NCBI RefSeq assembly: GCF_006345805.1
Contig: NC_043001.1
Location: forward strand, 40,858,001-40,922,000
DNA from: Octopus sinensis
Taxonomy: Eukaryota
DNA: 64,000 bases
Reading direction: 5' to 3'
Positions within the stretch are counted from its first letter, which is position 1. Every line of letters starts with the position of its first letter. The notes beneath the pieces were generated by a model. The model saw nothing but the letters and a program-made list of their open reading frames with translations. It was not told the origin of the DNA and searched no databases. This document shows positions 1 to 62,089 of this stretch, one piece after another. Made by a program: the position numbers and the translations under genes.

Positions 1-27
1 CCTTTTTATTTTTATTTTTTCCTAAGC

Positions 28-311
28 CAGATAAATACTTAGAAAGGTAACCTCTTGAATATTTTTGTTTATGTATCAACTCAACATAAGCATAAATTTA
101 GTGTTTATAAGTGTATTGAAATTGTATTGCCAACTTATATCTGTAACAAACTTTGGATGTAACTTCAAAATTGACTGATCCCAATTGCTCTTAATTTTGG
201 CCATAACCATAACTCAAGTGGATTTTTGCTAATTATAGTTTGTAAAGCATGGTATATTGTACTTAAGATTGATTCCAGAGAAACCAAAAGAAAAAAAAAA
301 TGGGTTCTTAA
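28..311. repeat. Local direct duplication, copy 1 (copy 2 at 2570-2857)
   Basis: cagataaatac(t/a)tagaaaggtaacctcttgaatatttttg...gtgggttcttaa recurs 2.54 kb downstream at roughly 90% identity by eye. No TIR, tRNA head or tail recognised. Confidence 0.9.
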
Positions 312-1435
312 CAAAGGAACAATGTACAAAATGTTGACTTCTTTGATTCTTCTTCACAGCATAATTATATATTTTTACTCTTTTTTTTTCTTCTCAAAAC
401 TCTGGATATTCTGTGAAACAGATAAGAGATGAATTTCTATCTGGATAGACTGCTAGTCTATACTATTCTTTTGTTGTTACTAGTTTAAACCGATAGAACA
501 GTAGCTAAGATGGGACATAGCCTTCAAGAATTTTAGTCAATCATATCAATCGTAGTCTGTAATGCAGTGTGTTGATTAATTTACTGATCTATATATTTCA
601 AATAATTAAGTCACACTTTTTATCGAAGGGAGGGTACAACACTTGCTTTACAAATATAAACATAAACATAGGCATGGATATATACATGCACATGCCTATA
701 CATATACATATAAACACGTGCACACACACACACACACACACACACGATGAGTTTCTTTCACTTTCCATCCACCAGATTCACTCACGAGGCTTTGGTCAGC
801 CTGAGGCCATATTAGAAAACACTTGCCCAAAACCATGTGGTTAGGAAGCAAAGTTCTTAATCACACAGCCATATATACATGTGTGCGCACATGTCTATAT
901 GTATGTATAAAAATGTCTGTGTGTATGTATGTGTAAATCTATGTGTATGTGCGACAGGCTTCTGCACATTTCCATCAATCAAATTTATTTACATAACCAG
1001 TTCACTCCAACAATAGTCACAATACTTTAGAAATGTAATAGTGATACACCCTCTCTTAGACCAGCAGACACTTTTCTGTTAAAGCACTTATGACACTTTA
1101 TATTAGAAAGGATTCAGAAACCCTATATAGGTACAGCAACACATTTTCTTTTATGTTGAAGTGGAAGAAATGATTTTAAAATTTGGATATTTGAATTTGA
1201 ATTGTTACAGCAGGACTTAGATTGTTCTAATATTAACCACTTAAAAACTAGAATAGTTTCAATTTTCAGCTCATCTACTGGATAAGTAAAGCCAGGAGTT
1301 TGATTGGATGACTTTTCTGTCCAGTACTCCAGTGTGTTACACTTTTGCTCTAACAATCATATTTCTTTGGTGTAAATAGATAAAATATCTTAGCTTTTCA
1401 CGTTTCTTGTAATTCATAATATTTCTTCTACTTAC

Positions 1436-1487
1436 AGTTAACAACATAGATTTTTAAATTTCAGGTAGATCCTTCTGGAACACTTAC
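1436..1487 (-). other. Candidate recursive splice site and 52-nt RS-type non-coding exon
   Basis: Minus strand: branch-like ACTAATC (about 1527), 37-nt pyrimidine tract, TAG immediately followed by GTAAGT, and a second donor ACT/GTAAGT 52 nt downstream. Stops in all three frames. Confidence 0.55.
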
Positions 1488-2069
1488 CTATGAGAAATAG
1501 AAAAAAAAAGAAACAAAAGATGAAGATTAGTTTGTATCAAAAAATATAAAAACATCAAGTATCCATATCACATAGGTATAACTAGTAAATTTTAAGCATA
1601 CAAAAAAGGAATTAATGAATGTATGTACACATGTACACACATATATTTGTAGGAAGGTTAAATAAGAAAAAGTAATTAAATCACACTTGAACCATGCTCT
1701 ATGGTCTTAAAAACAAACACATTGGATAATATAGTCTGAAAGAAAGGGCAGTAGGGCCATGGTTTGATTACCTTTGATCAGCATACTTGATCAGAGCTGA
1801 CCTGGGGCTAAACAACAACAACCACAACTTGTGAAAAGATGCCTTAGATGTGGTGGGAACAGTAACAGCCAGTCAACTCTTACTGAAAATACTAAATTTT
1901 TCGTTTTAATGGCTTAGTCAAACCTTCAAGGCTCCTGAGATTGGTGGGAGTTAGAAAGGAAGTTAAACTTCAAATGGAAAGACTTGCCTGAATGCTTTCA
2001 ACAGTGGAATCTGCTAATGGCACCAAGGTTCTTGTGGTGTTAAACCATGCAACAGATTAAGTCAACATT

Positions 2070-2857: not shown

Positions 2858-5574
2858 TAGACATATATAACAGAGGTTAAAATCTGGTATCCAAGGAAAC
2901 TCGAGATGGTCTGCATCATCAACAAACAGTCCATAAATACATATTTATCATTCCAGTTCTTCAGCTCAGATTTGCCATTGAAACTGACTTCCCATGATTT
3001 GGATTAGATTTTAGATTATGTAGAGCTCAGGTGGCTAAGTCAACATACTAAGTAGTCAGCAGTTTGTATTCTATGATTAGCAAGCAATCTGTTGTGTTTG
3101 TGACTAAGACACTAAACTTTCAAATGGCCCAGTACTAACTGCAAACTGGTACTGCAGAATAGGTGACATGGCTGCATGAGACTTGGGAAAGCCTTCAAAT
3201 AACAAGTGTCTTGTCAGAGGAATTAGTTAAGTGAAACCTGTGCAGAAGGTTGTTGCATATGTATAAACACTTGCATGTCTGTATGCCAGTGCATATCTTT
3301 CAGCATAGAGTGGAAAGAGAAGGGTTCTGTTAATGTGGCTTACCCAAAGATATACAATAAGAAGATGAAATCTTCATTGGTATGTCTGCAACACAATGAG
3401 TTAAGAGACTTACTTCAGTGTTGGGATAAGTGTCAACATGTAAGTAATCGTTTATAACATTTGCTACAGTGATGCTTTCATGACATCATTATTACAGATG
3501 GAAATTATTGTTTCCACATACCAATTATGCTTTGTCTGCTATAAGCAACATACTGTCTCTAATTTATGACTGTCCTCTTAATATGAAGGTTTTTACTGTT
3601 TTCTTCTTACATTTTACAAACTTAGGACTAGACATCATAATACAATTCTTTTGAATTAATATTCTCTGAAGTTGTTTTTTATCAGTTCATTAACACTAAT
3701 GAAATGACCAAGCCATCACTGTAGCCTTTATTTCAACTAATCTTTAATTGCTTCAATAAACATTATATCAACAGTTGGTTCCCAAAATGGTATAAATAGT
3801 AATGTCTATATAGGTATACAGGCAGTGATTTTGTGATTGTTTTAATATACTAGAGGTGAACAGGTTTGACATAAACCATACAAGTTAACTAAATTGTTAA
3901 GCATGAGTGACAGCTTGAATAGGTAGGTGGGAATAAAATTAAGATGAAACATACATATGTTTATATGTCAGTAGACATCTAGAACTTAAAGTATTAAATA
4001 GAAACTAACATTTAAATGTGGTAAGAGAGAAAATGTAAAACAAAGTGATAACATAGGTTTCATATAACTAAACAAAAGCAATTCTTCTACATTTTATTGA
4101 CATGGTATAAAGTCAGAACGCAAAAGGGAGAGGCTTTCAAAAAACATATGTTAAAAGAATTTATTCAAGATGACAAAATAAATAAACAAATAAAAGGAAA
4201 AAGTAAAGCAACCCAAAACCTTTCAGCTATGATAAATATATTGTTTCAAACAGTTATGAGAAGCTATGTAACTTAACAATTAATTCAGTTAGTTGACACC
4301 ATAAGGAAATGAATACCTTCCTGTAATAGGTTCTAGTTAATACCATGTATTATTTACAATGGGGGTCTATCCATTTAAAAGTCAAGTACTTTTGAAGTTA
4401 TGATGAAAAATAAAAATTTAGTATTATTTATATATATTTTTTGACAATGCTATAAAAGAAAAGCCATCAATATTATCATGATAGAATGAGTTAAAAGAAA
4501 CTAACAAACAATACAAGTCTTTTTTTCAAATCCAACTTTATTACAGTCAACCATTATCCAAGCCAGAATAAATATTTCTTTATGTTTATCCTCTAGAATT
4601 TATTAAATAGAACATTTATAGATTTTACAATATACATACAAGTGAACTAACATATATTTCTGATTTCATCTTCTATATACAAATGTTTTTATATATTTGT
4701 AAACACGCACCTATGTAAATCATACACAATACAATACATATACAAGTATATTCAGACAGATAGAAGGATGGATGGATGGATGGATGGATAGATGGGCAGA
4801 CAAACAAACAAATAGATAGATATGGGAGTGTATGCATATATACATTTTTAAGTTATTGGAAATTTGACAATACTCTGGTTTTAATGTTTTATTAAGGGTT
4901 TTTGATATACCATCAGTAATCCTTTATGCTTTGTTTGGAACAATAAATTTCCCATGTTTCAATACCTCCCATCTTATCTTCAGGTTAAATGATTTTAGTA
5001 GCAGTTATTACTGCCATTTTTATTGTAAGATTCATGAGAAAGCTTTTATGATTGTTTCTCATTTTTATCATGGGACTCCAAATTTCCTGACTATTGAGAT
5101 CAAGTTTGTTTCGGAAATAGTCATTCTGGAAATAGTTTGCTTGTGGCATTAGATGCATAATTATTTAGTCTATTACTGAAATATGCTATATATAATAGAG
5201 ATTTGCATTACATTTATACAACTTAACTAATTTAATTTTTGTTTCCTGATATTTCACATAAAATGGTTATGTTATCAACTAATGAGTTCTATCAACATTT
5301 GTTTTGTGTTACATGATATAATGTAGCCCTGGGCAATACAGTAAACTGCATCCAATGGTGAGTCTCCAGCTCAGAAATCAGGAATTATGGGAAGTATGAG
5401 GAATTATCCTTTAGTCACTACTGCTCTCAGGTTCATGCTGATTCAGGAAAGCAGTATCAATCTAGGGTCCCAGCTATGGGAGAAACAGTAGAAGATGGTT
5501 CTCTAGTTAAGGCATAAAGGATTCAGAAGAGACTATGCCTAGACTTGCATCACACAGTCCCACGAATGTGGCAC

Positions 5575-5900
5575 TACTTCTTACAAATACTTAGAAAGAT
5601 ATGTCTCCAACAGTATTGCAATAGACAAAGAAACAGAGAATGCACTGTGCAGTCAACTCAGCAGACAGTTCTCAACAAAAGCATGTCAACAGCAATATGA
5701 ATTTTTCTGTCAATGATAAATTAATTGTATACAATGCAGTAATGATAGCTACTCTCACCTACTGTTGTGAAAGCTAGGTATTGTAGAAGAGACACGGAGC
5801 GATTTCAAACTGTCCACCAAAGAAGACTATGGATAGTACATACTAAGAAACTAGAGGCAAGACAGGATGATCAATGAGAAGGTTTCATTGCAAGCAGAGA
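5575..5900 (+). mobile_element. Decayed RTE-clade LINE ORF2 fragment (post-RT region)
   Basis: Manual translation YKYLERYVSN..IDKETEN and KLIVYNAVMIATLTYCCES*VL*KRH matches the RTE/BovB pattern F.YLGS..ID.EI and K..VY.AVV..TLLY.CE.W.L..RH. Confidence 0.7.
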
Positions 5901-6346
5901 GATCAAATATTGAAGTAACCAAAGCACAACTGATTTTCTAAATCAATCTTTATTTCAACCTGCAAATGAGAGCTTAATATGGTATAATAATTTAATACTG
6001 TTTCAATTTAGTAGACTGAGATTTTATTCAACCCAGCAGTTATTCAAAATATCAATGGTTATTATTCCCTGCTTCCTATATACTGGAGGGACAGATTTCA
6101 TGTCAGCATGTGACTAATGAGTTCTTGCCATTGACAAGGTCCAAGAAGACCGAAATGCCTGATATTCTTGTAAATTTCTGCTAGAATGATTTTTTTTGGA
6201 TTTTTTTCAGAATGATTTTTATTTAATATAGCATGGCTATGAAGAGGTTTTCTTTCTGACAAAAATCCACAGCATCATACCACTTATTAGTGTATATACA
6301 TTAAACATGATAAACAGACAGTTATATATATATATATATATAGATA

Positions 6347-8169: not shown

Positions 8170-8401
8170 TATATCATCATCATCATTTAACGTCCGCTTT
8201 CCATGCTGGCATGGGTTGGACGGTTCAACTGGGGTCTGGGAAGCCAGAAGGCTGCACCAGGCCCAGTCTGATCTGGCAGTGTTTCTACAGCTGGATGTCC
8301 TTCCTAATGCCAACCCCACCGTGAGTGTAGTGGGTGCTTTTTACATGCCAGATAAGGCTGGCAAACGGCCACGATCGGATGGTGCTTTTTACGTGCCACC
8401 A

Positions 8402-8689: not shown

Positions 8690-10194
8690 TACATATACAC
8701 ACATATACATACATACATACATATGCTCATTAATTAACAGGGGCACCAAAACAGTACGACTGCTGTTAAATTTGTAAATAGGATCACAACCAAATGCTAT
8801 GTTTAATAAGCATATATTTAACCCCAGTATGAAGATAGACACCATGGTTATGCTACAGAACTTGCAACAACCAAGGAAGAAGATCAGATCAACTAATTTC
8901 AATTTTCATTCTTCAGTATTCACTCACTTCTCCTTAACTGCTGAAAGAATATGTATTTCTTACATACGGATGCTCTAATATTCATCCTATTGCTAACCAA
9001 CCAATCAACACTGAAATGAAAATTTGTCATAAATAAGCTAAATTGTGTTAATTTTTTTTCTTTTCACTCCCATTTTAGGAAGGGCACTCAACTGTAGGAA
9101 CCACACCAAAGCTGACAGTGGAGCTCAGTGCAACCTTGCAGTTCAGCAGATCCTGTCAAACCATCCAATCATACCAGCATGGAAAGTGGATGTTAAATGA
9201 TGGTGAGAGATACAACATATTAACTTCAATAAGGTCAGAACACATAACTAAATGTTTGTTTGTTTGTATTTGTGTTGTGTGTGTGTGTGTGCATACGCAT
9301 GCATTATGTATATGGGCAGCAGTCCATTATTTAATGCAGTCATTGTACCTCATCATCAAGAAATATATACTTTAGCAAAGAGACTATCAAGTATAATAAA
9401 TATTTTCCATTTCAATTGATGCCTATCAAAATGGAGAGCACTTGTATTGTCTACCAGCCAAACAGATTTTTTTCCACTAGTTATATTTCTGGTCATTACT
9501 GTAACTGCTAGTAGCTAAGTGGTAAAAGTAGGGGTGTGTATATTATAAAAAATGTGTGTTGTGAGGAGGGAGAATAACAATTGAAGCAATTCAAATTGCA
9601 AGTGTTCAACAACCAGCCAACAAAATTATTTTTTACTATTAGCAAGATGTAAATGTTTCTTTAAAGTCAGAGCTGACATACTTAATGTGGTGAGCCAAAA
9701 AGACGACCCTTAAAATATCACTTATGGATCCCTAATTCACTATTTTTCCTGTGTGGACCTCCCCCTCAACATCTTATATCGACCCCAGTTGAGAACCACT
9801 TGTTATGAGGATGATTATGATTAAGATGTTGCCAACAACAACAAGAATGATGAAATACGGTACTCTGTCACATTCCATCAGCAGCTAATTGCAACCAATT
9901 TATTGTTTTGTTTGTAACAAACATTTTAGTAAAACACTCAAACCCTCTAACTTTATTGTAAACACATTACATTCAGGTTACATTGATGACTAAGACAAGC
10001 TAAATATCATATTATTTATTATTTTTTTTACAAAATAAACATAAAGTATCATGAAAATGTTTAAAAAATATTTATAGTGGATTTGTTTGCCAATATTGGA
10101 GAGTTTAAAATCATAAAGACAATCATAACTAACATTTTCATGAAAAGAAAAAGCTACCAGATGAAAAATAATATTATTCTGTTATAGCTAAACT

Positions 10195-10595
10195 TCTTCT
10201 TCATCGTCATCATCGTCGTTTAACATCCGCTTTCCACGCTAACATGGGTTGGACGATTTTGACTGAGGGCTGGCAAACCAGAAGGCTGCACCAGGCTCCA
10301 ATCTTGATCTGGCAGAGTTTCTACAGCTGGATGCCCTTCCTAACACCAACCACTCCGAGAGTGTAGTGGGTGCTTTTTACATGCTACCGGCACAGGGACC
10401 AGTCAGGCGGTACTGGCAATGACCTTGCTCAAATCTTTTTACACATGCCACCGGCACAGATGCCAGTAAGGCGATGCTGGTAACAATTACGCTTGAATGG
10501 TGCCTTTGATGTGCCACTGGCATGGAAGCCAGTTAGCCGCTCTGGCAACGATCATGCTCAGATGGTGCTCTTGGCACCCTACTAGCACGGGCACA
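10195..10595 (-). mobile_element. RTE-tail element (family D) with internal tandem units
   Basis: (CAT)n then cgtttaacatccgctttcc...ctggatgcccttcctaacaccaacc, followed by repeated ttttacatgccaccggcac-type units. Confidence 0.85.
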
Positions 10596-14850: not shown

Positions 14851-15149
14851 GTTGTCAATTAAATCTAATCAGATTTCAAAATTCTAAGAATTTAAATATT
14901 TTAACATTGTGAAAAAGGAAAATATGAAATTATCTTCAATATATTTTTATTTTTAATTTTCTTAGTTACATTGTAAATGTTGTCAGTGTTTTACAAGATA
15001 ACAATTATTAGTGCCAAATGCTTCTGTAAACATCAAATTCTATTACAGCACTAAAACTATACAACAAAAATAAGACTAACAGAAAATTGTTATTTATTTC
15101 TATTCAGACAACCTCAAGAGACTGAGAAATCTCATGAAACAAAACAAAA

Positions 15150-16310
15150 AGAAAAAAAAACAGGCAGACATACAAAAGAGTGGGGGAAGAAATGACTATA
15201 CTTTCGCTAATCCCAATAATGGTTGGTACAATGGGATTGGTAAAAAGGGAAAGCAACCACTCCAATTGGAATTAGAAATTGAAAGCATTTCATTGGCTGG
15301 AAATTTCCAACATACTTCTAGCTTTCTATAAAAATGACTAAAAGCCATTATATAATAAAGGTACCAACAGAAGGAAGGTACAAGAAATGACTAGGAAAGT
15401 AGATTCTGTTATCAGTAGGATAGATACTAAAAATGTAGAAGACGCTAACTTATTGATCTATGCAGGAGGGGTAGTAGTCACCAGAAGATTAGATGTCTCA
15501 CAGGGAAAGATTTAAAAAGTGCAAATGTGGAAAAAGAGACTACAAAATAAAGTGGTCAAGATCTAAGTAGAATAGAAGCCTGGAAAACAAACTAATTAGG
15601 AAACACAAGATGCAAAGATACTTGGTCAAAGAGAAAGGATTTGGGACAATAATAGAAGAGTAACAGTGTATCATAGCAGTAGCAGGCAAGCTCTCCAGAT
15701 ATCAGAAAAGAATAGATCACTATCAACAGAATAAATTAGACCAGAGATAAACCAGAGGAGATTTTATAACCAAATAAATAGTGGAAAACAAAGTACTGAA
15801 GAGGAGAAACCTAATGCAGAGGAAGCTAGAAAGTTCTGGAGTAATATTTGGGATAAACCAGTCAATCATAATAGAGTTGCAGTATGGTTAAAGAAAGTGA
15901 AGGAAGTAGTGAGTGAGAAGCAGCCAGATCTACGATTAACTAGTGCATTAGTGAGGGAAAATACCAAATTGGAAGGGTCCAGAACCAGGTTTAGTTCAAG
16001 GGTAGTGGCTAAAGAAATTCAGTAGTTGAAATGGGAGGCTAAGGAACAACATCAGGATTGCCTTAATGGAGGAATAATACCAAATTGGAAGACTAGAGGG
16101 AGAACAATACTCATGAAGGATACAAGCAAGGGTAATACAACTAGCAACTATAGACCAATCACCTGCTTGCCATTAATGTGGAAGCTGTAAACAGGAATGC
16201 TTTCAGAAAGTATTTACAAGCACCTTGACAACCAGAATTTACTACCAGAATAACAGAAAGGTTGCAGGAAGAAGGCTAGAGGAACACATGATCTATTATA
16301 CATACACAAA
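15150..16310 (+). mobile_element. Decayed Dong/R4-clade non-LTR retrotransposon ORF fragment (up to RT N-terminus)
   Basis: Manual translation [51 protein letters not shown] (about 16147-16305) matches the R4/Dong pattern [11 protein letters not shown]...EQKGCR..RG..DQL.I. Upstream DANLLIYAGGVVV also fits. Many stops and frameshifts. Confidence 0.78.
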
Positions 16311-16384
16311 GCAGAAAATTACTATTTTAAAATCTCACGATGTGAGATATTCAGCAACAGTACTTTGTAGTAAAGATTATTTGC

Positions 16385-16529
16385 CAACATAACATGACAG
16401 TCCTGGTTTAGGACAAATGTTGCTTGATTTAACCCCAGGAGACATCATCTCCAGCTGGCTATATGACACGATCTGTGTCCTTATATTACAGCAACATTCG
16501 TCCTAAACCAGGACTGCCATGTTATGTTG
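16385..16529. repeat. 40-bp inverted repeat (fold-back, 65-nt spacer)
   Basis: caacataacatgacagtcctggtttaggacaaatgttgct (16385-16424) versus the reverse complement of 16490-16529: 2 mismatches. Partial third copy at 16579-16620. Confidence 0.9.
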
Positions 16530-16639
16530 CTAAACATAACGGGAATTTAGCAGCACCACCTCTAGCCAAACAATTATTCTGGTTTAGGACAAATGTTGCT
16601 GTAATTTAACCCCAAGAGACAATCTGTGCTCTTATATTT

Positions 16640-16812
16640 TGAGGGAGGGGATGAGTCGATTACATCAACCCTGGTGTTGCACTGGTACTTAATTTATTGA
16701 TCCCAAAAGGATGAAAGACAAAATCAACCTCAGCGGAATTTGAACTCAGAATGGAGTGACGGGCAAAATGCCGCTAATAATTTCATCCAGCATGCTAACA
16801 ATTCTGCCAGCC
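16640..16812 (-). mobile_element. Family B SINE
   Basis: aaggatgaaagacaaaatcaacctcagcggaatttgaactcagaa core. Confidence 0.85.
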
Positions 16813-24869: not shown

Positions 24870-25195
24870 TTCATCATCATCATCATCATCATTGTTTAGC
24901 ATCCGCTTTCCATGCCAGCATGGTTTGGACGGTTCAACTGGGGTCTGGGAAGCCAGAAGGCTGCACCAGGCCCAGTCTGATCTGGCAATGTTTCTACGGC
25001 TGATCTGGCAATGTTTCTGGATGCCCTTCCTAACGCCAACCACTCCATGAGTGTAGTGGGTGTCTTTTATGTGCCACCGGCACAGGTGCCAGACGAGGCT
25101 GGAAAACAGCCACGATCAGATGGTGCTTTTTACGTGCCACCAGCACGGAGGCCAGGCGAGGCTGGCAACGGCCACGATCGGATGGTGCTTCATCT
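24870..25195 (-). mobile_element. RTE-tail element (family D) with two internal units
   Basis: (CAT)n tail, ggatgcccttcctaacgccaacc, then ttttatgtgccaccggcacaggtgccagacgaggctgg units. Internal 23-bp tandem duplication at about 24978-25020. Confidence 0.85.
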
Positions 25196-33805: not shown

Positions 33806-34544
33806 GTCAGATAAGTTTTCGGCCCATTACTGAAAAACATGAATGTTACAGCTTCATCTTTTTCCGTTATCCCTGTGGCTTTTGTGGGTTGTGTGTCTAC
33901 TGAGATAAATCATTGTTTTTTAAAAGCAAATTATATAAATAAGTAAAAGGGTTTGGTTTTCTAAGCATGGGAGTATTTGATTTGAAAATAAGTATTTGGT
34001 AGAGATAGACAATGAGAGTAAACAGAAAGATGGACAGAAAAGGTAGAGTGACAGATAGACAGAGAAAGAAAAACAAAAAAAAAAAAAAGAGAAACAGATA
34101 CATAGGTAAAGAGGTGGGGGATATAAATGAGAAATCAGAATAAGATATTGGGGTGTTAATTAGTAATATAGTCAAGATGAGAAACAAAGAGACACAGGTG
34201 GAAAGATATGAGAAACAGTTGAGGGAAGAAGTGAGAGAGTGAGTCATTTAATGTGATGAGTATAAGTTATATTCATCATTTGAGAATGAGTTATACTCAA
34301 CATGCCAACCATAACCATCTCAATCAATAATTAAGACCAAATAAGAAACAAAAGAGGAACAGAATTTTAAAAATGTACAATTAAAACAACATAATATTTC
34401 TTTATCCTAGTGGATTTCTCATTGATGTTGGTACTAGAAATAGAAAAAATTAAATTCCAACAAAGGTAACTATGTTAGAGTTACTCTTGGATAACAATAC
34501 AACATCAAAACCACCAAGTACAGGTACTTATAACAGTACAGATC

Positions 34545-35180
34545 CTGCCATCTGAAGTACGAGCAGCCATCAAAATGATGAAAAACAAAGCTGCTGGACC
34601 AGGCAGGATTTTCACTGAGATGATAAAACTGTTAGAGGAATATGGGATTAGAAAACTGACAGATGTAATAAAGAAGATCTATGATGATGGGAAATTTCCA
34701 GAAGATCTCAGTATTGATTGAGATCTTTTATTGCACTCCCGAAGATATCAAGAGCAGTGGATGTGAACAACATTGCACAATTGGTCTCATGAATCACGTT
34801 ACAAAGATCATTCTGAGAAATTTACTACTGTGAGCAAGAAACAGAACAGCTGAGATTGAAATTGAACAGGTTGGCTTCATAATGAGAGTTGGTACTAGGA
34901 ATGCTATTTTTGTATAGAGAATGATAATAGGGTAGGCTGTAGAGATGCATAAAGACATCTTCGGGTGTTTCATAGATTACACAAAGGCCTTCAACAAAGT
35001 AAGATAAGGCATGTTATTTGAAAAATTCAGTAACCTTGATCTGCATGGGAAGGCCTCCAAACCTTGCAGAACAAGTATTAGAACTAATCAGCATGCATAA
35101 AAATAGATGGAGACTGCAGTAATTACACTAGCATCAAGAGAGGGGTTAGACAAGGATGTGTTATGTCACCAGATCTTACT
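34545..35180 (+). mobile_element. Decayed RTE/BovB-like LINE reverse-transcriptase fragment
   Basis: AAIKMMKNKAAGP..IFTEMIKLLEEYGIRKLTDVIKKIYDDGKFPEDL..IFIALPK; ends IKRGVRQGCVMSPDL (RT motif B). Confidence 0.82.
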
Positions 35181-37551
35181 TTATGCCAAACACCCAAATC
35201 ATTAGCTCATGAACCTTCACAATCTTGTAACAGTTTTCTATCAGTCTATTTGCAGGAAGCAAATAGACACCTTTAATTTTCCTGACACTCTTAGGCAACC
35301 AGGCCCATCTAGGTAATGACGCCTAGTATCCTGCTGCTATTTTTTGAAATGCTACCTTTAGTGGGGATTGAAATCAGAACCTTCTGGTGATCTTAATCTA
35401 GGATTAAATGTACATAGAAGAAAGAGAGAAAGAAAGAGAGAGAGAGGAAGATAGTGCTTGGAAGCAAAACAAACAAGTTATTTGCCTGTATGATTGCAAT
35501 GCAATATATTGTGTATTGGTTTATGTTTATGTGGAATCGCCATAAAAGGAATCTGCTTGATGCATGTTGAAGTATTTTTGTAATGATACATGACAGAGAA
35601 ATAAAAGAAAAACATTTAATCAGCATTATTATGTAAAAGAAGGAATGCAAAAAAAGATTCTAAATTTGAAATATTTTTTCAGAATAAATTTTACTCATTT
35701 GAAATGGTTTTTTTTGTTTTGCTAAGTTTTCAACCTTTTTTTTTTATTGTTCATTTTATAGTGAGTCATGGAAGCATTTAGAACCCGTTTGAGTAAAATA
35801 TCAATGTTTAAAAGACATTGCTAGATATAGAAAAGAAACCAATGAAATGACTGAATTACAGGAATTATAAATCTACAGAAAGGAATATTCAAAGACAAAA
35901 CTCATAGAATATTTCAAGACAGTTAAACAATGCAACAATGAAGACCTCAACTTAACAGAGAATAAATTAGGGGATACCATTGAAAGTTTGAAGGTAAAAG
36001 TAATAACCCAAATAAAGCGGTAGATGAAGGAAATGAATAAAAATGGAAAATATAAATATAATTAAAAGACTGACACACAACAGAAAAAAAACTAACTTTT
36101 ATATAATTTTATATTATTTATTATTTATGTTATTTGTTATTTCAATTCACTTTTCTGATATTTTTATCTGAATTAGATTTTTATAGAAGTATGACATCAG
36201 TTAAAAACGGTCTGTAAAAGTCTTTAAAGACATTTTGTGCCTTTAGTCACATAGAAAAAATTGTTAAACAGTTTTCCATACAATATGGAAGCTCTATAAT
36301 TTGAAATAATAGTTTTATTTATTAGCACTAGTTCTGTTGCACTACTCAAAGACTGAGTCTTTCAATTTAATTTGTTTCATATTCCTATTAATTTCTTCTA
36401 TAACTTACTTTACCCAATGTACTCAATACACATTAACTTTTCCCTTTCTATACTGCCAGTCATTCCTTCCTCTCATCTGGGCCACTTCTGTTGCCACCCA
36501 TCACCTACTTTGTATTTGTCCACTTCAGCTATTACCAGTCACTCTCCTTATATTTACATCCCTAAAACCCTGCCTTTTTTTATTTCCCTCACCAGTTCTG
36601 ATCTTTTTGCTGTCATCACTCTCTCTCTCTCCTCTTTCCTGTTCCTTTTTAGGTTACTGAATACTTCCTACAGTTATTGTATACAAGCCCTGTCCTCTGC
36701 TGATGGAACTACAGAAAGCACTACCTGTGCTCCCTCTGACTGATTGGTAACCAAAATAACAACTCTACTGCTGGTGCCACAAAAAATATGCCCGTTACAA
36801 AGTGTAAAGTGATTAGCAAATGAGCTAAGAAAGTGTAGGGAACCTTTAGTACTGCCTTGTGAGAACAAAACAGCCTCTCTAGTGTTAGTGCCATGAGAAA
36901 ATGCACCCAATACATGCAGTAAGGACATCCAGCTGAAGAAACAAAGCCAAGTAACATGTACAAGAATGAGTATATGAGTGCAGTGGTTCCCAATAAGAAA
37001 TGACTTGGACCATAATGACTTGTCAAATCCATACCTATATGGAAATCAGTTAATAAATAATGATGATGATGATGGTCATGGTTATGATGATGATGAAGAT
37101 GATACAAACAGATGGAGAGACAGAGAGACAGTTAGACAGATAACCCTCTGAAACAACTGTGGTTGATGCTATAACATTTTCTCTAAACTGTTGCAAGTCA
37201 ACACCTGCAGGAGGGACAAGAACAATGAAAAGATCTACAGAGCCAATTACTGGAGGAAGGACTAAGCATGGTGGTTAGTGTGAGACAAGGAGGGGTTGGA
37301 TACACCGAGGGTGGTGAGAAATAGAGAGATAGTGAGTTAGGAGTGATTGAATGGATCAGGTAGAAAACCATTCAGCTCTGAGGAACAAAGGACATAAAAG
37401 TACTGGCAGAAAACATAAAGACAGGTGAGAAGAAATCATACTTGTGGGCTAGAGTCTAAAGCATGTCCATGAAATATTTTGTGCCAATCATATTTTGGCA
37501 TTAAATGATATATATGTATGTACATATATATATATACATATACATACATAT

Positions 37552-38050
37552 CATCATCATAATCGTTTAACGTCTGCTTTCCATGCTAGCATGGGTTGGA
37601 CAATTTGACAGAGGACTGGCGAACCAGATGGCTTCACCAGGCTCCAATCTGATCTGGCAGAGTTTCTACAGCTGGATGCCCTTCCTAACGCCAACCACTC
37701 TGAGAGTGCAGTGGGTGCTTTTACGTGCCACTGGCACAAGGGCCGGTCAGGTGGTACTGGTAACGGCCACGCTCAAGTGCTATTTTTTACATGCCACCAG
37801 CAGCACTGGCAACGACCTCACTCGAATGTTTTTCACGTGCCTGCGGCACAATTGCCAGTAAGGCGACACTGGTAACGATCATGTTTGAACGGTGCTTTTT
37901 ACGTGACACCGGCATGGGAGCCAGTCAGCTGCTCTGGCACCAATCACGCTCGGATGGTGCTCTTAGCACTCCACTGGCATGGGTACCAGTCATCGAATTT
38001 GCGAATTTGATTTGATTTCGATTTCACTTGCCTCAGGTCTTCACAAGCAG
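37552..38050 (-). mobile_element. Long family D RTE-tail element with about 5 internal units
   Basis: (CAT)n tail and central motif plus tandem gtgccactggcac units. 5' end gaagacctgaggcaagtgaaatc resembles the RTE 3' region. Confidence 0.85.
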
Positions 38051-39360: not shown

Positions 39361-39387
39361 GTATATATACACACATGTATATATCAT

Positions 39388-39565
39388 CATCATCATTGTT
39401 TAACGTCCGTTTTCCATGCTAGTATGGGTTGGACAGTTCGACCAGGGTCTGCGAAGCCAGGAGGATTCACCAGGATCCAGTCTGATCTGGCAGTGTTTCT
39501 ACAGCTAGATGCCCTTCCTAACACCAACCACTCCGTGAGTGTAGTGGGTGCTTTTTACGTTCCAA
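39388..39565 (-). mobile_element. Family D RTE-tail element (short)
   Basis: catcatcattgtttaacgtccgttttccatgctagtatgggttggac...gatgcccttcctaacaccaacc. Confidence 0.85.
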
Positions 39566-39649: not shown

Positions 39650-39902
39650 GGCGCAGGAGTGGCGGAGTGGTGTGTGGTAAGTAGCTTGCTAACCAACCAC
39701 AGGTTCCGGGTTCAGTCCCACTGCGTGGCATCTTGGGCAAGTGTCTTTGCTATAGCCCTGGGCCGACCAATGCCTTCCGAGTGGATTGGTAGACGGAAAC
39801 TGAAAGAAGCCTGTCGTATATATGTGTATATATATATAATATATATATATATATATTATATATTATATATATATATATATTAATATATATATATATATTA
39901 TA

Positions 39903-39980
<78 letters not shown>

Positions 39981-40003
39981 ATTAATAATATAATATATAT
40001 ATT

Positions 40004-40039
<36 letters not shown>

Positions 40040-40054
40040 ATATATATATATTAT

Positions 40055-40127
<73 letters not shown>

Positions 40128-40144
40128 TATATATTATATATATA

Positions 40145-40182
<38 letters not shown>

Positions 40183-40282
40183 TTATATATATATATATAT
40201 TATATATATATATATATATTATATATATATATTATATATAATATATTATTATATATATATATATAATATATATTATATATAT

Positions 40283-40330
<48 letters not shown>

Positions 40331-40357
40331 TATTATATTATATATTATATATATATT

Positions 40358-40407
<50 letters not shown>

Positions 40408-40437
40408 TATTATATATAATATAATATATATTATATA

Positions 40438-40479
<42 letters not shown>

Positions 40480-40494
40480 ATATAATATATAATA

Positions 40495-40587
<93 letters not shown>

Positions 40588-40723
40588 AATTATATATATA
40601 TATTATATATTATATATTATATATATAATATATATTAATATATATATATATATATATAATAATATATATATATATATTATATATATATATATATTATATA
40701 TATATATATATTATTATATATAT

Positions 40724-40812
<89 letters not shown>

Positions 40813-40835
40813 TATATAATATATATAAGATATAT

Positions 40836-40907
<72 letters not shown>

Positions 40908-40969
40908 TATATATATATAATATTATATATATATATTATATATATATATATATATTAATTATTATATAT

Positions 40970-41002
<33 letters not shown>

Positions 41003-41033
41003 GATATTATATATAATATATATAATATATATA

Positions 41034-41117
<84 letters not shown>

Positions 41118-41340
41118 TATATATGTGTGTGTGTTTGTGTTTGTCCTCCTAGCATTGCTTGACAACCGATGCTGGTGTGTTTACGTCCCGGTCACTTAGC
41201 AGTTATTCGGCAAAAGAGACTGATAAAATAAGTACTGGGCTTACAAAGAATAAGTCCCGGGGTCGATTTGCTCGACTAAAGGCGGTGCTCCAGCATGGCC
41301 GCAGTCAAAATGACTGAAACAAGTAAAAGAGTAAAAGAGT
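39650..41340 (+). mobile_element. Family A SINE whose internal microsatellite has expanded to about 1.3 kb
   Basis: Head at 39650-39815 and tail half at 41125-41340 both match 33377-33805. Confidence 0.9.
39817..41124. repeat. About 1.3-kb imperfect (TA)n array
   Basis: Direct reading. Confidence 0.97.
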
Positions 41341-45660: not shown

Positions 45661-46010
45661 TATCATCATCAACATTTAACATCTGTTTTCCATGCTGGCA
45701 TGGGTTGGACAGCTTCACAGGAACTAGCAAGGACAAGATCCCCCTCCAGGTTTCATTGTCTGTTTTGGCTTGGTTTCTACAGCTGAATGCTTTTCCTTAT
45801 GCCAACCACTTTAAAAAGAGTACTGGATGCCTTTTATGTGGCACCAGCACTAGTGTTTTTTTTTACATGGCACCAGCACCAGTGCTTTTTACATAGCACC
45901 AGTACCAACACTATTTATGTGGCACCGGTACCTGTACCAGTGCCTTTTAGATGGCACCAGCACAGTGCTTTTTATGTGGCACCAGCAACAGTGCCTTTTA
46001 TGTGGCACCA
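45660..46010 (-). mobile_element. Family D-like element with a minisatellite of about 26-bp units
   Basis: About 7 copies of ttttatgtggcaccagcacyagtgc at about 45830-46010. Confidence 0.75.
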
Positions 46011-51844: not shown

Positions 51845-52555
51845 TACAAGGGTCAGTTGAAAAGTTTTCAACATAGTCACCTTTGCTGTCCACACATTTC
51901 TTCCAACAGTATTACAATGTTTGGATCCCAATGGTGGAGAAGCTTTCATCCTTTTGGTCAGAAAAATCATCAACAGCAGATATGACATCATTATCACTGT
52001 GATACTGCTTTCCAGCCAAGTATTTATTCATGTTAGGGAATAGATGATAGTCAGATGGGGCCAAATCAGGAGAATAGGGAAGCTGATCAACCAGTTCAAA
52101 GCTGCAGTCATGCACAGCAGACATTGAAACCAGAGACTTGTGAGCTGGAGTATTGTCCTTATAAAACCCATTTTGTCGTAACTGCCTCAGCAAGTTGACA
52201 TAGTGTGCTCCATTGATGGTGTGATTCTTTTGAAGACAGTCAATAAACACAATGCCTTTGCATTCCAAAAAATTGTCATACCTAGTTCATTGTGCTGAAT
52301 ATTCTCAACACTCTCATGGGATACACTAACAGCATTGGCTATTTGATTTATAGTCTGTCAATGATGGCAGTAGCAGAACATCCAGGCTTGGGTCATCTTC
52401 TAGACTCTCCCTTCCCTTCCTAAATTCAGCTGCCCACTTTTGCACTGTTGATAAAGCCAGAGTGTCAGAAGAGTTGAAATGAAAGCATGCAAGATTTCAC
52501 AGTTCTAGCATCACTCTTTTATAAACAGCCTTTAACTTTTTAGTCCACCTTCATA
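51845..52555 (-). mobile_element. Internally deleted mariner (DD34D) element with both TIRs
   Basis: ORF 51912-52268: ..DNTPAHKS..DQLPYSPDLAPSDYHLFPNMNKYLAGKQY. N-terminal STVQKWAAEFRKGRESLEDDP. Ends TA-caagggtcagttgaaaagtt and aactttttagtccaccttca-TA. Confidence 0.92.
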
Positions 52556-54251: not shown

Positions 54252-54905
54252 ACTATAGCTATTCTGACCCTCTCCTCCATCACTCCTTTGTGCCACTCAT
54301 TTGCACAGGACACATTTTAGCTCAGAAAAATATCTACACTGACCTGAGTACAATGCACCTACTCTCCTGTACAAGTGTTAGGACAGAAAGTCAACAACTC
54401 ACGTGCTCTCAAACACACAGGTGGGACAATCTAATGCACACAGTACACCTGGTGCAGTAGTTGGTAAATTTGGGCAGAAAATGCATTGGATTCTGTGGTC
54501 CCTTTATTAACCTTTCTGGTGTTGACGCCACAGAAAAAAACAAACATCCTCAGTGCACTCTGTAAAGCAGTTAACTATAAGAAAGGCATCCAACCATAGA
54601 AATCAAACCAAATGACACAAGTATCAGTCTTCAGAAGCAGCAGTTCCTAATAAGAGATGACTCAGACTGTGACAAACTGTCCAATCTATGCCAACATGGA
54701 GAGTTGATGTAAAAATAATGATGAGGATGATATACATGTATTGCATGCTTGCACACACACATGTATGTGCATGTAATACATATATATCATTATCATCATC
54801 ATTTTTACATGAAGACAACAGACAAAAACCAGACACCACCGTCACCACTACTCTATCCTCTCCAAACCTTTTCCAGATGTATGTCACAGCATATCTTTCT
54901 CACCT

Positions 54906-55190
54906 TCATTCTAAGGAGAAAAGTTTTAATTCTTTCAGTCTTTCCCAGTAGCTGATACATTGCATTGAGACAATGTTCTTGGTGTAGCTTTGTTGGATTG
55001 CCTCAAGTTCCGCCGTGGATTTTATAGTGTGTGGTGACCATAGCTGGGAGTAGTAGCCCAAGTGGCTGAGGATGTGTGTCCTCCAAAGGATCATCAATGT
55101 TTCCTTTTCTCTTGTTTTGAAAGTTTGGAGAATCCAACCAGCCATCCATCTACATTTTATTACAAAATTAGTAATATGCACTTGAAAAGA
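54906..55190 (-). mobile_element. CR1/L2-type LINE ORF2 fragment (post-RT)
   Basis: FKTREKETLMILWRTHILSHLGYYSQLWSP..AELEAIQQSYTKNI..ISYWERLKELKLFSLE matches the CR1 pattern ..LEYC..WSP....LE.VQR..TK.I....Y.ERL..L.L.SLE. Confidence 0.85.
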
Positions 55191-55204
55191 TACATATTTG
55201 TTGG

Positions 55205-57355
55205 TAGTCCATTGACTCCTCAGTTAGATTGATTTGTCCTTCTAAATCCAAAATAGGCATTATTAGTAAAAAAAATCATTGATAGGGTAATACCCATCCT
55301 TATCTCTAAAATTAGATTAGATCTCTGGTCTGATACCCAAGAGGTGGTTGGATGGTTCAAGCTTCTAGAAATTAGTAAAAATAGTAAATTCTTGCAACTA
55401 GATATAGAGAGAAGTAGTAAAGTACAGTTAGAAAGGCATAGGAGAAATTTATTTTAGACTTTTCAAAAATTTAGGACTAAAAATTACTATAGGTGAAGAT
55501 TATTGTAGAGTGAATTTTCTTAATGCTACCTTCTGTCTTGATACTAGATTATTTGAACCATTTATTTCATAAACCAAATGATCATATTAAGTACATTAAC
55601 ATAGCATCCAACCATCCACCCTTGATTATACGGGGACTAGTTAAGAATATTTCTACAAGAATCTTTAGATTATCTGCTAACAATAAAATTTTCGAATCTC
55701 ATGCATCTTATTGTTGTGCTGCTCTAGCTAGGGCTGGGTACCATGAAAAATTCAATATATACAAGAAACAAGTAATTCCTCCAACTATGGTGCACATTGT
55801 ATACCACCACAATGTTACGGCTTGAGAACTCACTCAGATAAAGAACACAGGCCAGGAAGAATTGGTCATATCAATGAACTACCAACAAAACCTCATAGAC
55901 ACACACGACATAATAATTCAACTGCTTATTCCAATCCTGTACAACACACTCAATCAAATAAGCCTAATTAATAACAGATATAGGAATCAGGATGTCCTTG
56001 GGTTCAAACAGATTTTCGGTTTGGATGTTTCAAAGAAGATTGCTGGAAAATTTTTTGCTGCTTTGGACAAATGTTTTCCTAAATCTAATCAGTATCATGC
56101 TATTTTTATCGACACACCGTGAAGGTATCCTATACCAACTCTGCTAATTTAGAGCAGCTTATGCATCGCATAAACAATAGCAAAATGCGACAAAGGTTCA
56201 ATAACCCACCTACTGGATCTAGCGAACATTTGCATCTAACTACCAACCAAGAAGATGTAAACTGCATTGATAAACACCAACTACAACCAATTTGTAGTTG
56301 TAGAAATGCTTATGATACAGCTAGCATGGTAAAAATGCCAGTAAATGGAGTCGGTACTGTCTTATATACAAATAAATACGATAAATGCTCATGCAGAGAA
56401 AAATCAAAATGTCCTTTGATGAATCTCTGTATGAGTACAAATCTTGTATATAAATGTACCATGCACTCAAAGGGAGGATCCTATGTTTACATTGGGCAGA
56501 CAGCTGATTCATTTAAGATTCATTATCGTAACCATGTTGCCAGCTTTAAGATAATCAATAAGAGACATTCAACACCTTTGGCAGATTTTGTATGGCAACT
56601 GAAAGAGGATAAAATGAAGTACAGTATTAATTAGTCCATAGTAAGGTATGTGAAACCATACAATATAATTTCCAGGAGATACCGTCTCTGATCTAAGGAA
56701 TCCTTGTCTATTCTGTGGACTAACAAGAAGATAATTAATAGAATTTCTGAACAACTCTCAAGATGCCTACATGCATATAAATGTACTTTTGCACAATGTA
56801 GTGAGAATGAATTTTGAGTAACCGTTAACTTAATTTACTTTAAGGTATGGATGACTTAAGTTTACTTTTAACCTCCCCATTCTTATATACACCAAGTAGA
56901 TAACTAACTCACTTTGTGACCATGAGTGCACCAAACCTCACGTGTGTGTATGCTCACATTTTTGTGGATGATTGTATGAGCAAGTGTACTCGTGCAATGC
57001 AGCTTGCCTGAAAGCATTTATACATCCATATCTGTCAACGGTTATTTTTAACACTTTCCTCGCTTGATTGCATGTTCGTTTCTCTTTTTGTCATCAGTGA
57101 TTTAATTTTTGATCTTCTACATAAATGAAGATATTTCCTCCATTTTGCTGCTTTTCTCTATACAATACGGAAAGTTACATTGCAGAACAGTCATTTTAAA
57201 GAGTTGTATTTATTTATCACCCAACAAGAGGCGTCTGCACCACCTGATGCTCCTGAAACAGTTGTTGAGTGTTCTACCCAAGAGGAATTGATGCTATATG
57301 TATCAAAACAATTGTCGTGATTAATAATAAATTCTCGTATAATCCATCTTCTGTC
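55205..57355 (+). mobile_element. Penelope-like retroelement remnant (RT with core deletion, GIY-YIG endonuclease, 3' terminal repeat)
   Basis: VRLICPSKS / KIGIISK..W..T..V..WF..KFLQLDIE; KNLGLKITI..VNFL; HKPNDHIKYINIASNHPP; ORF 56119-56634 C..CPL..C..NLVYKC..YVYIGQT..FK..Y.NH..SF. Decayed hammerhead-like end at 57241-57319. Confidence 0.9.
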
Positions 57356-57456: not shown

Positions 57457-57585
57457 GTGGTTGGCGTTAGGAAGGGCATCCAGCTGTAGAAACACTGCCA
57501 GATCTGGCTTCCCAGATCCCTGGTCGTACCGTCCAACCCATGCTAGCATGGAGAACGGACGTTAAACGATGATGATGATGATGAT
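57457..57585 (+). mobile_element. 5'-truncated family D element with (GAT)n tail
   Basis: ttggcgttaggaagggcatccagctgtagaaacactgccagatc...gcatggagaacggacgttaaacgatgatgatg. Confidence 0.88.
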
Positions 57586-57980
57586 GTGTGTGTGTGTGTG
57601 TCTATATATATGAATATATATATGTATATATATGTGTATATATATATATATATGTATATATTTGTATATATATATATATGTGTGTATGTATATATATATA
57701 TGTGTGTGTATATATATGTGTGTGTGTATATGTGTGTGTGTATATATATATGTGTGTGTGTGTATATATGTGTATATATGTGTGTGTGTATATATATGTG
57801 TGTATGTATATATATATGTGTGTATATATATATATGTATATATATGTGTATATATATAAATGCACATATATATATCTATATATAATATATATATATATAT
57901 ATGTAATGTATATATGTATGCATATATGTATATATATATATATATGTATATATATGTATGTGTGAGTGTGTGTGTGTAAA
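57586..57980. repeat. Compound (TA)n/(TG)n microsatellite
   Basis: Direct reading. Confidence 0.95.
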
Positions 57981-58620: not shown

Positions 58621-58626
58621 TATATA

Positions 58627-58691
<65 letters not shown>

Positions 58692-59189: not shown

Positions 59190-59250
<61 letters not shown>
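58621..59250. repeat. (TA)n/(CA)n array with higher-order tatacatgta-containing units
   Basis: Direct reading; a unit like tatacatatacatgta repeats at about 58880-59190. Confidence 0.92.

Positions 59251-62009: not shown

Positions 62010-62089
<80 letters not shown>

What the first reader, a model, noticed from the sequence alone, without database searches (positions are those of the whole stretch)
1431..1531. Textbook recursive splice site (AG|GTAAGT) with a downstream RS-exon donor on the minus strand
Seen: the minus strand reads ACTAATC-ttcatcttttgtttctttttttttctatttctcatAG|GTAAGTgttcc. This is a branch-point-like motif about 39 nt upstream, a long pyrimidine tract, and a 3' splice site fused directly to a perfect 5' splice site. 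A second perfect donor (ACT|GTAAGT) lies 52 nt further, defining a frame-disrupting exon with stops in all frames. Known: this is the ratchet-point/RS-exon layout used to remove very long introns in Drosophila and in long vertebrate neural genes. Inference: a long minus-strand transcript crosses this window and splices recursively. I do not recall this being described for cephalopods, whose introns are very long.
Basis: partly seen in the sequence, partly recalled or inferred. Interest (0 to 1): 0.72.

Follow-up and report, generated by a model that had tools for sequence, protein, structure and literature searches.

The report
Candidate recursive splice site, unverified
The minus strand really does carry a very strong acceptor fused to a perfect donor, with a 52-nt cryptic exon behind it, which is the known layout for removing a long intron in steps. 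Nothing available here could show that it is transcribed, used or conserved, so it remains a good candidate and not a demonstrated case.

Summary
Observation: confirmed to the base. On the minus strand the order is CTAAT (branch A at 1527), an AG-free U-rich tract 1526-1490, AG 1489/1488 | GTAAGT 1487-1482, then 52 nt with stops in all frames, then a second GTAAGT at 1435-1430.

Chance:
- The core 8-mer AGGTAAGT is at chance level: 1 seen, 2.07 expected.
- The acceptor half ranks about 5th of 7104 AGs in the window and the donor half 3rd. Their coincidence is expected only 0.01-0.02 times per 64-kb window.
- With the second donor and the branch motif the expectation falls to about 2e-5 to 2e-4 per window. 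That still allows roughly one to some tens of chance sites in a Gb-sized genome, and my thresholds were set after seeing the site.

Context: the site lies in DNA that is single-copy within the window, which is full of repeats and transposon remnants and has no recognisable coding exon. Positions 1-38 kb show strong CpG depletion and T>A on the minus strand. This is compatible with a minus-strand transcribed gene body but does not prove one.

Not testable here: RNA evidence, conservation, host gene and organism.

Verdict: recursive splice site about 0.4, chance pseudo-exon about 0.38, ordinary non-coding exon about 0.15. If real, it is a new member of a known kind. Interest is modest.

The parts
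1526..1530 (-). Branch-point-like motif CTAAT (fits CTRAY), putative branch A at 1527, 39 nt upstream of the acceptor G
   Evidence: Read directly. A CTRAY at 18-45 nt is found upstream of 10.6% of random AGs in the window, so the support is weak.
1490..1526 (-). U-rich polypyrimidine tract, AG-free (tcttcatcttttgtttctttttttttctatttctcat)
   Evidence: It is 88% pyrimidine and 71% T over 34 nt. Only 3 of 7094 AGs in the window have as much. The acceptor matrix score ranks 5th of 7104.
1488..1489 (-). Putative 3' splice site AG; ligation point between 1488 and 1487
   Evidence: It is the first AG downstream of the branch motif.
1482..1487 (-). GTAAGT directly after the AG: the 5' splice site that would be regenerated once an upstream exon is joined at 1487 (ratchet-point donor)
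   Evidence: It is the only AGGTAAGT in the window. The donor half ranks 3rd of about 7100 6-mers that follow an AG.
1436..1487 (-). Putative cryptic RS-exon, 52 nt, not a multiple of 3, stops in all three frames
   Evidence: The length matches the ~50 nt given for fly cryptic RS-exons (PMC8605326).
1430..1435 (-). Second GTAAGT (context ACT|GTAAGTAG): the donor that would define the RS-exon. It is weaker than the regenerated donor because positions -3 to -1 do not match.
   Evidence: Its matrix score is 6.1 against 10.4 for the first donor. An exact GTAAGT 25-100 nt downstream of a random AG occurs in 1.6% of cases.

Best explanation
This is a candidate recursive splice site (ratchet point) with its cryptic RS-exon, lying in a long intron of a gene transcribed from the minus strand.

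Proposed mechanism (inferred, not shown):
1. U2AF and U2 recognise the long U-rich tract, the CTAAT branch site (A at 1527) and the AG at 1489/1488.
2. U1 on the downstream GTAAGT (1435-1430) defines the 52-nt exon 1487-1436.
3. The upstream exon is ligated to position 1487. This removes the first intron segment and recreates a donor, exon-end|GTAAGT.
4. If the upstream exon ends in the usual AG, this regenerated donor pairs better with U1 than ACT|GTAAGT does. It wins the competition, so the 52-nt exon leaves with the rest of the intron and no trace stays in the mRNA.
5. Rare inclusion of the exon would shift the frame, bring in stop codons and send the mRNA to nonsense-mediated decay.
For: Shown from sequence:
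- The full layout is present at the stated coordinates.
- The acceptor is 5th of 7104 and the fused donor half 3rd of about 7100. The expected number of equal or better joint sites per window is 0.012-0.019 when real halves are recombined.
- Only 3 of 7094 AGs have an equally pyrimidine-rich tract.
- A second exact GTAAGT lies 52 nt downstream (1.6% by chance) and a CTRAY branch motif lies at -39 (10.6% by chance).
- The site is the top joint acceptor+donor score on either strand of the window.
- It lies in sequence that is single-copy within the window, not in a repeat.

From the literature:
- They are followed by a cryptic, poorly conserved, out-of-frame RS-exon of about 50 nt, closed by a donor weaker than the regenerated one (PMC8605326).
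- Most fly sites have a donor less than 100 nt downstream (PMC6224609).

Context, which is suggestive only:
- No coding exon was detected in more than 62 kb upstream on the minus strand.
- Unique DNA of 1-38 kb has CpG o/e 0.18 with a TpG/CpA excess. On the minus strand T exceeds A by 6.4 +/- 0.7%, with the same sign in all ten 4-kb bins.
- The three reverse-transcriptase-like fragments in 1-38 kb, recognised by eye only with no Pfam match, all lie on the plus strand (Pfam negative).
Against: - There is no RNA evidence of any kind, no conservation data and no host gene.
- The core 8-mer is at chance frequency. With a short 8-nt tract the joint score is expected 0.58 times per window.
- All my thresholds were set after seeing the site. 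In a genome of a few Gb, even 2e-5 to 2e-4 per window leaves about one to some tens of chance sites with the whole layout, and hundreds with the core plus the tract.
- The TT at -6/-5 found in 196 of 197 fly ratchet points is TC here.
- Poly(A)-signal hexamers are not depleted on the minus strand: 58 AATAAA in 1-38 kb against 39.5 expected from composition.
- The SINE-like copies are mostly in the minus orientation, so there is no general antisense bias of repeats.
- The A-rich plus-strand tract could be the decayed tail of a plus-strand retroposon.
- In vertebrates only a small minority of strong motif matches are used (own knowledge).
Confidence: 0.4

Rival explanations
1. Chance juxtaposition (a pseudo-exon). 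A T-rich tract, possibly the antisense image of an A-rich retroposon tail on the plus strand, happens to be followed by AGGTAAGT and by another GTAAGT 52 nt on. The DNA is non-coding, and is either untranscribed on this strand or transcribed without these sites being used.
For: - AGGTAAGT occurs once against 2.07 expected. The short a-priori motif occurs in 21% of shuffles.
- With an 8-nt tract the joint score is expected 0.58 times per window.
- The window holds about 5 other strong-acceptor plus decent-donor pairs within 300 nt on both strands.
- Stops in all frames occur in 25% of random 52-mers.
- No gene, exon or transcript could be tied to the minus strand.
- The genome is evidently very large and repeat-rich, so rare layouts must occur by chance somewhere.
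Against: - Top-5 and top-3 halves coincide at zero distance: 0.007-0.02 expected per window.
- An exact second GTAAGT at the typical RS-exon distance occurs by chance in 1.6% of cases, and the branch motif in 10.6%.
- The joint expectation is about 2e-5 to 2e-4 per window.
- The site is not part of any repeat seen in the window.
Confidence: 0.38
2. An ordinary splice site of a minus-strand transcript, not a ratchet point. One version is that the 52-nt interval is a real, included non-coding exon (5'-UTR, lncRNA or poison cassette exon) that merely begins with GTAAGT. The other version is that TAG|GTAAGT is the normal donor of an exon lying upstream, for example one opened by the acceptor at 1737.
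For: - A strong acceptor and a strong donor 52 nt apart are what any short internal exon looks like.
- An acceptor scoring 12.8 at 1737 lies 248 nt upstream of the GTAAGT at 1487.
- Annotated, expressed exons that regenerate a donor are common in deuterostomes (PMC6224609).
Against: - The interval is out of frame with stops in all frames.
- No homologue was found for any surrounding open frame (searches are uninformative).
- A 37-nt U-rich exon end would be unusual for the ordinary-donor version.
- Exons that start with a perfect GTAAGT are expected to be skipped by donor competition unless that donor is repressed (PMC8605326; PMC6224609).
Confidence: 0.15

Closest known systems
Drosophila intronic ratchet points with cryptic RS-exons (Ubx, kuz, Bx, luna and others; Hatton 1998, Burnette 2005, Duff 2015, Joseph 2018/2021)
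   Same: Fused acceptor and donor AG|GTAAGT. An unusually prominent U-rich tract. A short (~50 nt), out-of-frame, non-coding exon closed by a donor less than 100 nt downstream that is weaker than the regenerated donor.
   Different: TC instead of the near-invariant TT at -6/-5. There is no evidence of a host intron, junction reads, saw-tooth coverage, lariats or conservation. The source is a much larger genome, where chance matches are far more numerous than in the fly.
Vertebrate cryptic RS-exons in long neuronal genes (CADM1/2, ROBO2, NCAM1 and others; Sibley 2015; Blazquez 2018)
   Same: An RS-exon defined first, then skipped through the regenerated donor. Inclusion would introduce premature stops. 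The surrounding genome is large, repeat-rich and CpG-depleted.
   Different: Vertebrate sites were defined by RNA evidence and deep conservation, and only a handful are fully suppressed cryptic sites (PMC8605326). Here both kinds of evidence are missing and the host gene is unknown.
Intronic pseudo-exons or decoy exons (good splice-site pairs that are not productively spliced)
   Same: A good acceptor-donor pair with no coding capacity in repeat-rich non-coding DNA. The window holds several other such pairs.
   Different: Those pairs do not have a consensus donor fused directly to the acceptor. This site is the best joint acceptor+donor score on either strand.

Membership tests
Intronic ratchet point with cryptic RS-exon (fly type) | 3' splice site fused to a 5' splice site, AG|GTRAGT | tested here: met
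   AG 1489-1488 | GTAAGT 1487-1482
Intronic ratchet point with cryptic RS-exon (fly type) | Pyrimidine tract more prominent than at ordinary acceptors | tested here: met
   88% Y over 34 nt; 3 of 7094 AGs reach this; acceptor rank 5 of 7104. The feature is described in 10.1101/006163.
Intronic ratchet point with cryptic RS-exon (fly type) | TT at positions -6/-5 (196 of 197 fly sites) | tested here: not met
   The site reads T(-6) C(-5) (statistic). This is a statistic of fly sites and may not be required elsewhere.
Intronic ratchet point with cryptic RS-exon (fly type) | Short cryptic exon (~50 nt, non-coding, out of frame) closed by a donor less than 100 nt downstream that is weaker than the regenerated donor | tested here: met
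   52 nt, stops in all frames. ACT|GTAAGT scores 6.1 against 10.4 for the fused donor. Criteria from PMC8605326 and PMC6224609. Met at sequence level only.
Intronic ratchet point with cryptic RS-exon (fly type) | Lies in the sense orientation inside a long intron | tested here: inconclusive
   No exon was detected on either strand (Pfam on 256 open segments; HMMER on selected segments). CpG o/e 0.18 and minus-strand T>A of 6.4% over 1-38 kb are suggestive. There is no poly(A)-signal depletion. Searches are void.
Intronic ratchet point with cryptic RS-exon (fly type) | Splicing intermediates: junction reads to the site, saw-tooth read density, lariats to and from the site | not testable with these tools
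   No RNA data can be reached.
Intronic ratchet point with cryptic RS-exon (fly type) | Sharp evolutionary conservation of the AG|GT core and of the downstream donor | not testable with these tools
   Attempts to reach orthologous DNA failed: ORFs next to the site not on record; void; no exact 24-mer in metagenome contigs.
Vertebrate cryptic RS-exon (Sibley type) | Inclusion of the RS-exon disrupts the reading frame or brings in a premature stop | tested here: met
   52 nt, stops in three frames. However, 25% of random 52-mers here do the same.
Vertebrate cryptic RS-exon (Sibley type) | Host is a very long, typically neuronal gene; the site is in a very long intron | not testable with these tools
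   Host gene unknown.
Ordinary internal exon (coding or cassette) | Open reading frame and/or frame-preserving length; present in mature RNA | tested here: not met
   No open frame, and 52 is not a multiple of 3. Presence in mRNA is not testable. A non-coding UTR or lncRNA exon is not excluded.
Chance pseudo-exon | Occurs no more often than composition and local sequence structure predict | tested here: inconclusive
   The core 8-mer is at chance. The extended layout is expected 0.012-0.019 times per window, or about 2e-5 to 2e-4 with the second donor and branch motif. Thresholds were post hoc and the genome is large.

The most novel reading that the evidence does not exclude
The site is a working ratchet point. 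It would imply that stepwise removal of long introns through cryptic RS-exons is shared by ecdysozoans, lophotrochozoans and deuterostomes, and so is probably ancestral to bilaterians. It would also give a seed motif for a genome-wide search in the very long introns of cephalopod genes.
Probability: 0.35. Interest if true: 0.5.

Novelty: new member of a known kind. Interest (0 to 1): 0.3.

Why it matters
Recursive splicing has been documented by RNA evidence in flies and vertebrates. In the library searched, only one paper contains both 'recursive splicing' and 'cephalopod', and only in passing. Outside flies and vertebrates, the one case I read was a predicted site in a locust.

A validated site in a mollusc with very long introns would extend the mechanism to the third great bilaterian branch. 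It would also give a template (long U-tract, AG|GTAAGT, ~50-nt cryptic exon) for a strand-aware genome-wide scan. One unverified motif does not do that. The mechanism needs nothing beyond the ordinary spliceosome, so a specialist would not be very surprised either way.

Tried and rejected
1. Large homology searches. I ran the search for homologous proteins with concatenated six-frame open segments: around the site, the whole minus strand, and the plus strand plus transposon controls. All returned nothing. The built-in control, a mariner-type piece with the PYSPDLAPSDYHLF motif, also found nothing, and the number of word-sharing candidates fell as the query grew (4655, 3125, 619).

2. Exact look-ups. 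ORFs next to the site (1123-1356, 1337-1447, 1527-1640, all minus) and two transposon ORFs are not on record. This closed the route to orthologous or same-species contigs.

3. Metagenome scan. An exact 24-mer across the site found 0 matches.

4. RNA genes. Rfam and ARAGORN found nothing in the window. The site is not a U1 pseudogene or another known RNA.

5. Pfam. Scans of 256 open segments found only mariner remnants.

6. HMMER over 1.84 billion representatives. All 150 listed hits, which include all 139 with E <= 1e-10, fall on the 181-codon transposon-like frame. None of the eight other candidate segments therefore has a strong relative; weaker hits could have been hidden.

7. Organism identification failed. 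Their Logan runs SRR11869390/91/94 could not be decoded. SINE consensus strings are not in the paper library.

8. LTR reading of the 290-bp direct repeats around the site: rejected, because there are no TG..CA ends, target duplication or primer-binding site.

9. Poly(A)-signal and U1-site strand asymmetry: no signal beyond composition.

10. A Markov simulation timed out. It was replaced by the tool's shuffles and by the recombined-halves null.

Full report
OBSERVATION

- CTAAT is at 1530-1526, with the putative branch A at 1527.
- A 37-nt AG-free, U-rich tract runs 1526-1490.
- AG is at 1489-1488, fused to GTAAGT at 1487-1482.
- After 52 nt (1487-1436) comes a second GTAAGT at 1435-1430, in the context ACT|GTAAGTAG.
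- The 52-mer has stops in all three frames.

The coordinates, the 39-nt branch distance and the 52-nt spacing are all correct.

IS IT MORE THAN CHANCE?

The core 8-mer is not. AGGTAAGT occurs once on both strands, against 2.07 +/- 1.47 in dinucleotide-preserving shuffles, and 88 of 100 shuffles contain at least one. A short a-priori motif, YYYYYYYYNYAGGTRAGT with one mismatch allowed, occurs once against 0.24 expected; 21 of 100 shuffles have one.

What is unusual is the quality of the two halves and the fact that they coincide.
- Only 3 of 7094 AG dinucleotides in the window have an upstream 34 nt as pyrimidine-rich as this one (88% Y).
- With generic metazoan splice-site matrices (my own approximation) the acceptor ranks 5th of 7104. 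The 6-mer after the AG ranks 3rd as a donor.
- I used a null that keeps real sequence structure: every real upstream half is recombined with every real downstream half. It expects 0.012 (16-nt tract) to 0.019 (30-nt tract) sites per window with at least the observed joint score, but 0.58 if only 8 nt of tract are scored.
- The site is the best joint score on either strand.

The accessory features add something.
- An exact GTAAGT 25-100 nt downstream of a random AG occurs in 1.6% of cases, and any GTRAG in 11%.
- A CTRAY branch motif at 18-45 nt occurs in 10.6%.
- Stops in all three frames occur in 25% of random 52-mers and say little.

Multiplied together, the full layout is expected about 2e-5 to 2e-4 times per 64-kb window. 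Two cautions apply. The thresholds were set after seeing the site. In a genome of a few Gb (some 40,000 such windows) these figures still allow about one to ten chance copies of the whole layout, tens if one allows for post-hoc inflation, and several hundred of the core plus the tract.

SURROUNDINGS

- The window is 33% G+C and full of microsatellites. 19% of it has another copy inside the window.
- The site lies in sequence that is single-copy within the window. It sits between two 290-bp direct repeats (24-311 and 2566-2857, 92.5% identical, without LTR hallmarks) and two copies of dispersed repeats (689-950, 2069-2284).
- Rfam and ARAGORN find nothing.
- Pfam scans of 256 open segments of at least 42 codons on both strands find only mariner remnants.
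- A full HMMER scan of 1.84 billion representatives was run with nine candidate segments. Strong hits fell only on a 181-codon transposon-like frame at 56089-56631.
- No cellular coding exon is therefore recognisable on either strand. That fits a very long intron and an intergenic desert equally well.

COMPOSITIONAL HINTS OF TRANSCRIPTION

- Unique DNA of 1-38 kb has CpG o/e 0.18, with GpC about 1.0 and TpG/CpA about 1.3, against CpG o/e 0.37 in 38-64 kb.
- After masking repeats, A exceeds T on the plus strand by 6.4 +/- 0.7% in 1-38 kb, positive in all ten 4-kb bins, against 0.4% beyond.
- If the source is an octopus, methylation there is reported to be nearly confined to bodies of broadly expressed genes and virtually absent from intergenic DNA and repeats (PMC9476566). 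Such CpG loss would then point to a transcribed gene body.
- T>A on the sense strand is the known sign of transcription-associated asymmetry in mammals (own knowledge). By that rule the transcribed strand would be the minus strand.
- Both inferences are soft. The genome-wide baseline is unknown to me. The two 4-kb bins with the strongest skew hold two of the three plus-strand reverse-transcriptase-like fragments, which were recognised by eye only and have no Pfam match.
- Poly(A)-signal hexamers are not depleted on the minus strand. The SINE-like copies are mostly in the minus orientation.

WHAT COULD NOT BE DONE

No RNA data can be reached. Orthologous DNA could not be reached either.
- ORFs beside the site are not on record.
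- An exact 24-mer is absent from metagenome contigs.
- The three large homology searches with concatenated queries returned nothing even for a mariner control. I treat them as void, not as negatives.
- The organism could not be verified. The abundant ~180-nt repeat looks to me like a common octopus repeat, but that is memory, not a test.

MECHANISM PROPOSED (INFERRED)

1. U2AF and U2 bind the U-tract, the branch site and the AG.
2. U1 on the second GTAAGT defines the 52-nt exon.
3. The upstream exon is ligated to 1487, which removes the first intron segment and regenerates exon-end|GTAAGT.
4. With the usual exon-final AG this donor outcompetes ACT|GTAAGT (matrix scores 10.4 against 6.1). The cryptic exon then leaves with the remaining intron.
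5. Rare inclusion would be frame-shifting and NMD-prone.

This is the model established for flies and vertebrates (PMC8605326; PMC6224609).

COMPARISON WITH KNOWN SYSTEMS

The layout matches fly ratchet points in these respects:
- the fused sites;
- the prominent U-tract (10.1101/006163);
- the ~50-nt out-of-frame cryptic exon;
- the weaker downstream donor less than 100 nt away.

It lacks the TT at -6/-5 seen in 196 of 197 fly sites and has TC instead. The defining functional features could not be tested: sense position in a long intron, splicing intermediates and sharp conservation. Membership is therefore met at sequence level and open at functional level.

WEIGHING

- The per-window chance of the core plus the tract is about 1-2%.
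- If this genome holds on the order of 50-500 true sites, the per-window prior for a true site of this quality is about 0.1-0.6%.
- The second donor and the branch motif favour a true site by perhaps 5-15 fold. The compositional hints add a little.
- I allow about 30% that such sites are not used at appreciable numbers in this lineage. In vertebrates only a few fully suppressed intronic sites are firmly established, and lungfish show no expansion.

This gives recursive site about 0.4, chance pseudo-exon about 0.38, ordinary non-coding exon or ordinary donor about 0.15, and the remainder other.

VERDICT

If real, it is a new member of a known kind in a lineage where the searched literature describes none. 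Interest is modest (0.3) until RNA or comparative data are examined.

Noticed in passing
window 1-38000 versus 38000-64000: There is a compositional break near 38-40 kb. Unique DNA left of it has CpG o/e 0.18 and A>T by 6.4% on the plus strand, positive in all ten 4-kb bins. Right of it CpG o/e is 0.37 and the skew is 0.4%. GpC is about 1.0 and TpG/CpA about 1.3 throughout. This may be the edge of a methylated, transcribed domain.
   Followed up: partly
window 39817-41124; also 57603-57959 and 58619-59249: A (TA)n microsatellite of about 1.3 kb sits right at the compositional break. There are further TA/CA-type arrays several hundred bases long, and about 80 tandem-repeat rows in all.
   Followed up: no
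window 8170-8344, 10203-10380, 24879-25072, 37548-37726, 39380-39560, 45661-45810, 62084-62253 (all minus); 9075-9206, 57457-57582 (plus): A SINE-like family of about 180 nt has at least 9 copies at 70-88% identity. It ends in (GAT)n. Some copies carry internal 62-73-bp tandem duplications (25065-25190, 62250-62458). There is no tRNA or Rfam match, and the consensus strings are not found in the paper library.
   Followed up: partly
window 51915-52286 (-) and 62774-62926 (+): Two separate mariner/Mos1-type transposase remnants: a weak DDE-domain match (PF01359, E 6e-4, below the cut-off) and an HTH_48 match (E 1.6e-6, above the cut-off).
   Followed up: partly
window 55774-56907, open frame 56089-56631 (+): A 181-codon intact open frame contains a GIY-YIG-like 'YVYIGQT' stretch, recognised by eye only. 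It has 1547 relatives (E <= 1e-3) in the 1.84-billion-protein library and no Pfam domain. The surrounding ~1.1 kb is 75-76% identical to Logan contigs from SRR11869390, SRR11869391 and SRR11869394. It is probably an uncharacterised transposable-element protein.
   Followed up: partly
window 24-311 and 2566-2857: Two 290-bp direct repeats, 92.5% identical and 2.5 kb apart, bracket the candidate site. There are no TG..CA ends, target-site duplication or primer-binding site, so they are probably two copies of a dispersed element and not LTRs.
   Followed up: partly
window 5300-6250, 15000-16700, 34400-35300 (+); 54850-55450 (-): Decayed reverse-transcriptase-like open segments were recognised by eye, with no Pfam match at E <= 0.01. 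The three copies inside 1-38 kb are all on the plus strand.
   Followed up: no
window 37206 (-) and 36651 (+): The two strongest pyrimidine-tract acceptor-like sites of the window lie in a CT-rich low-complexity patch at 36.3-37.3 kb. That patch is open in several frames on both strands. Neither site has a usable fused donor (GTGTTG, GTTACT).
   Followed up: partly
tool behaviour: The word pre-filter of the search for homologous proteins returned fewer candidates as a concatenated query got longer (4655, 3125, 619) and missed an obvious mariner control. Long concatenated queries should not be used with it.
   Followed up: yes
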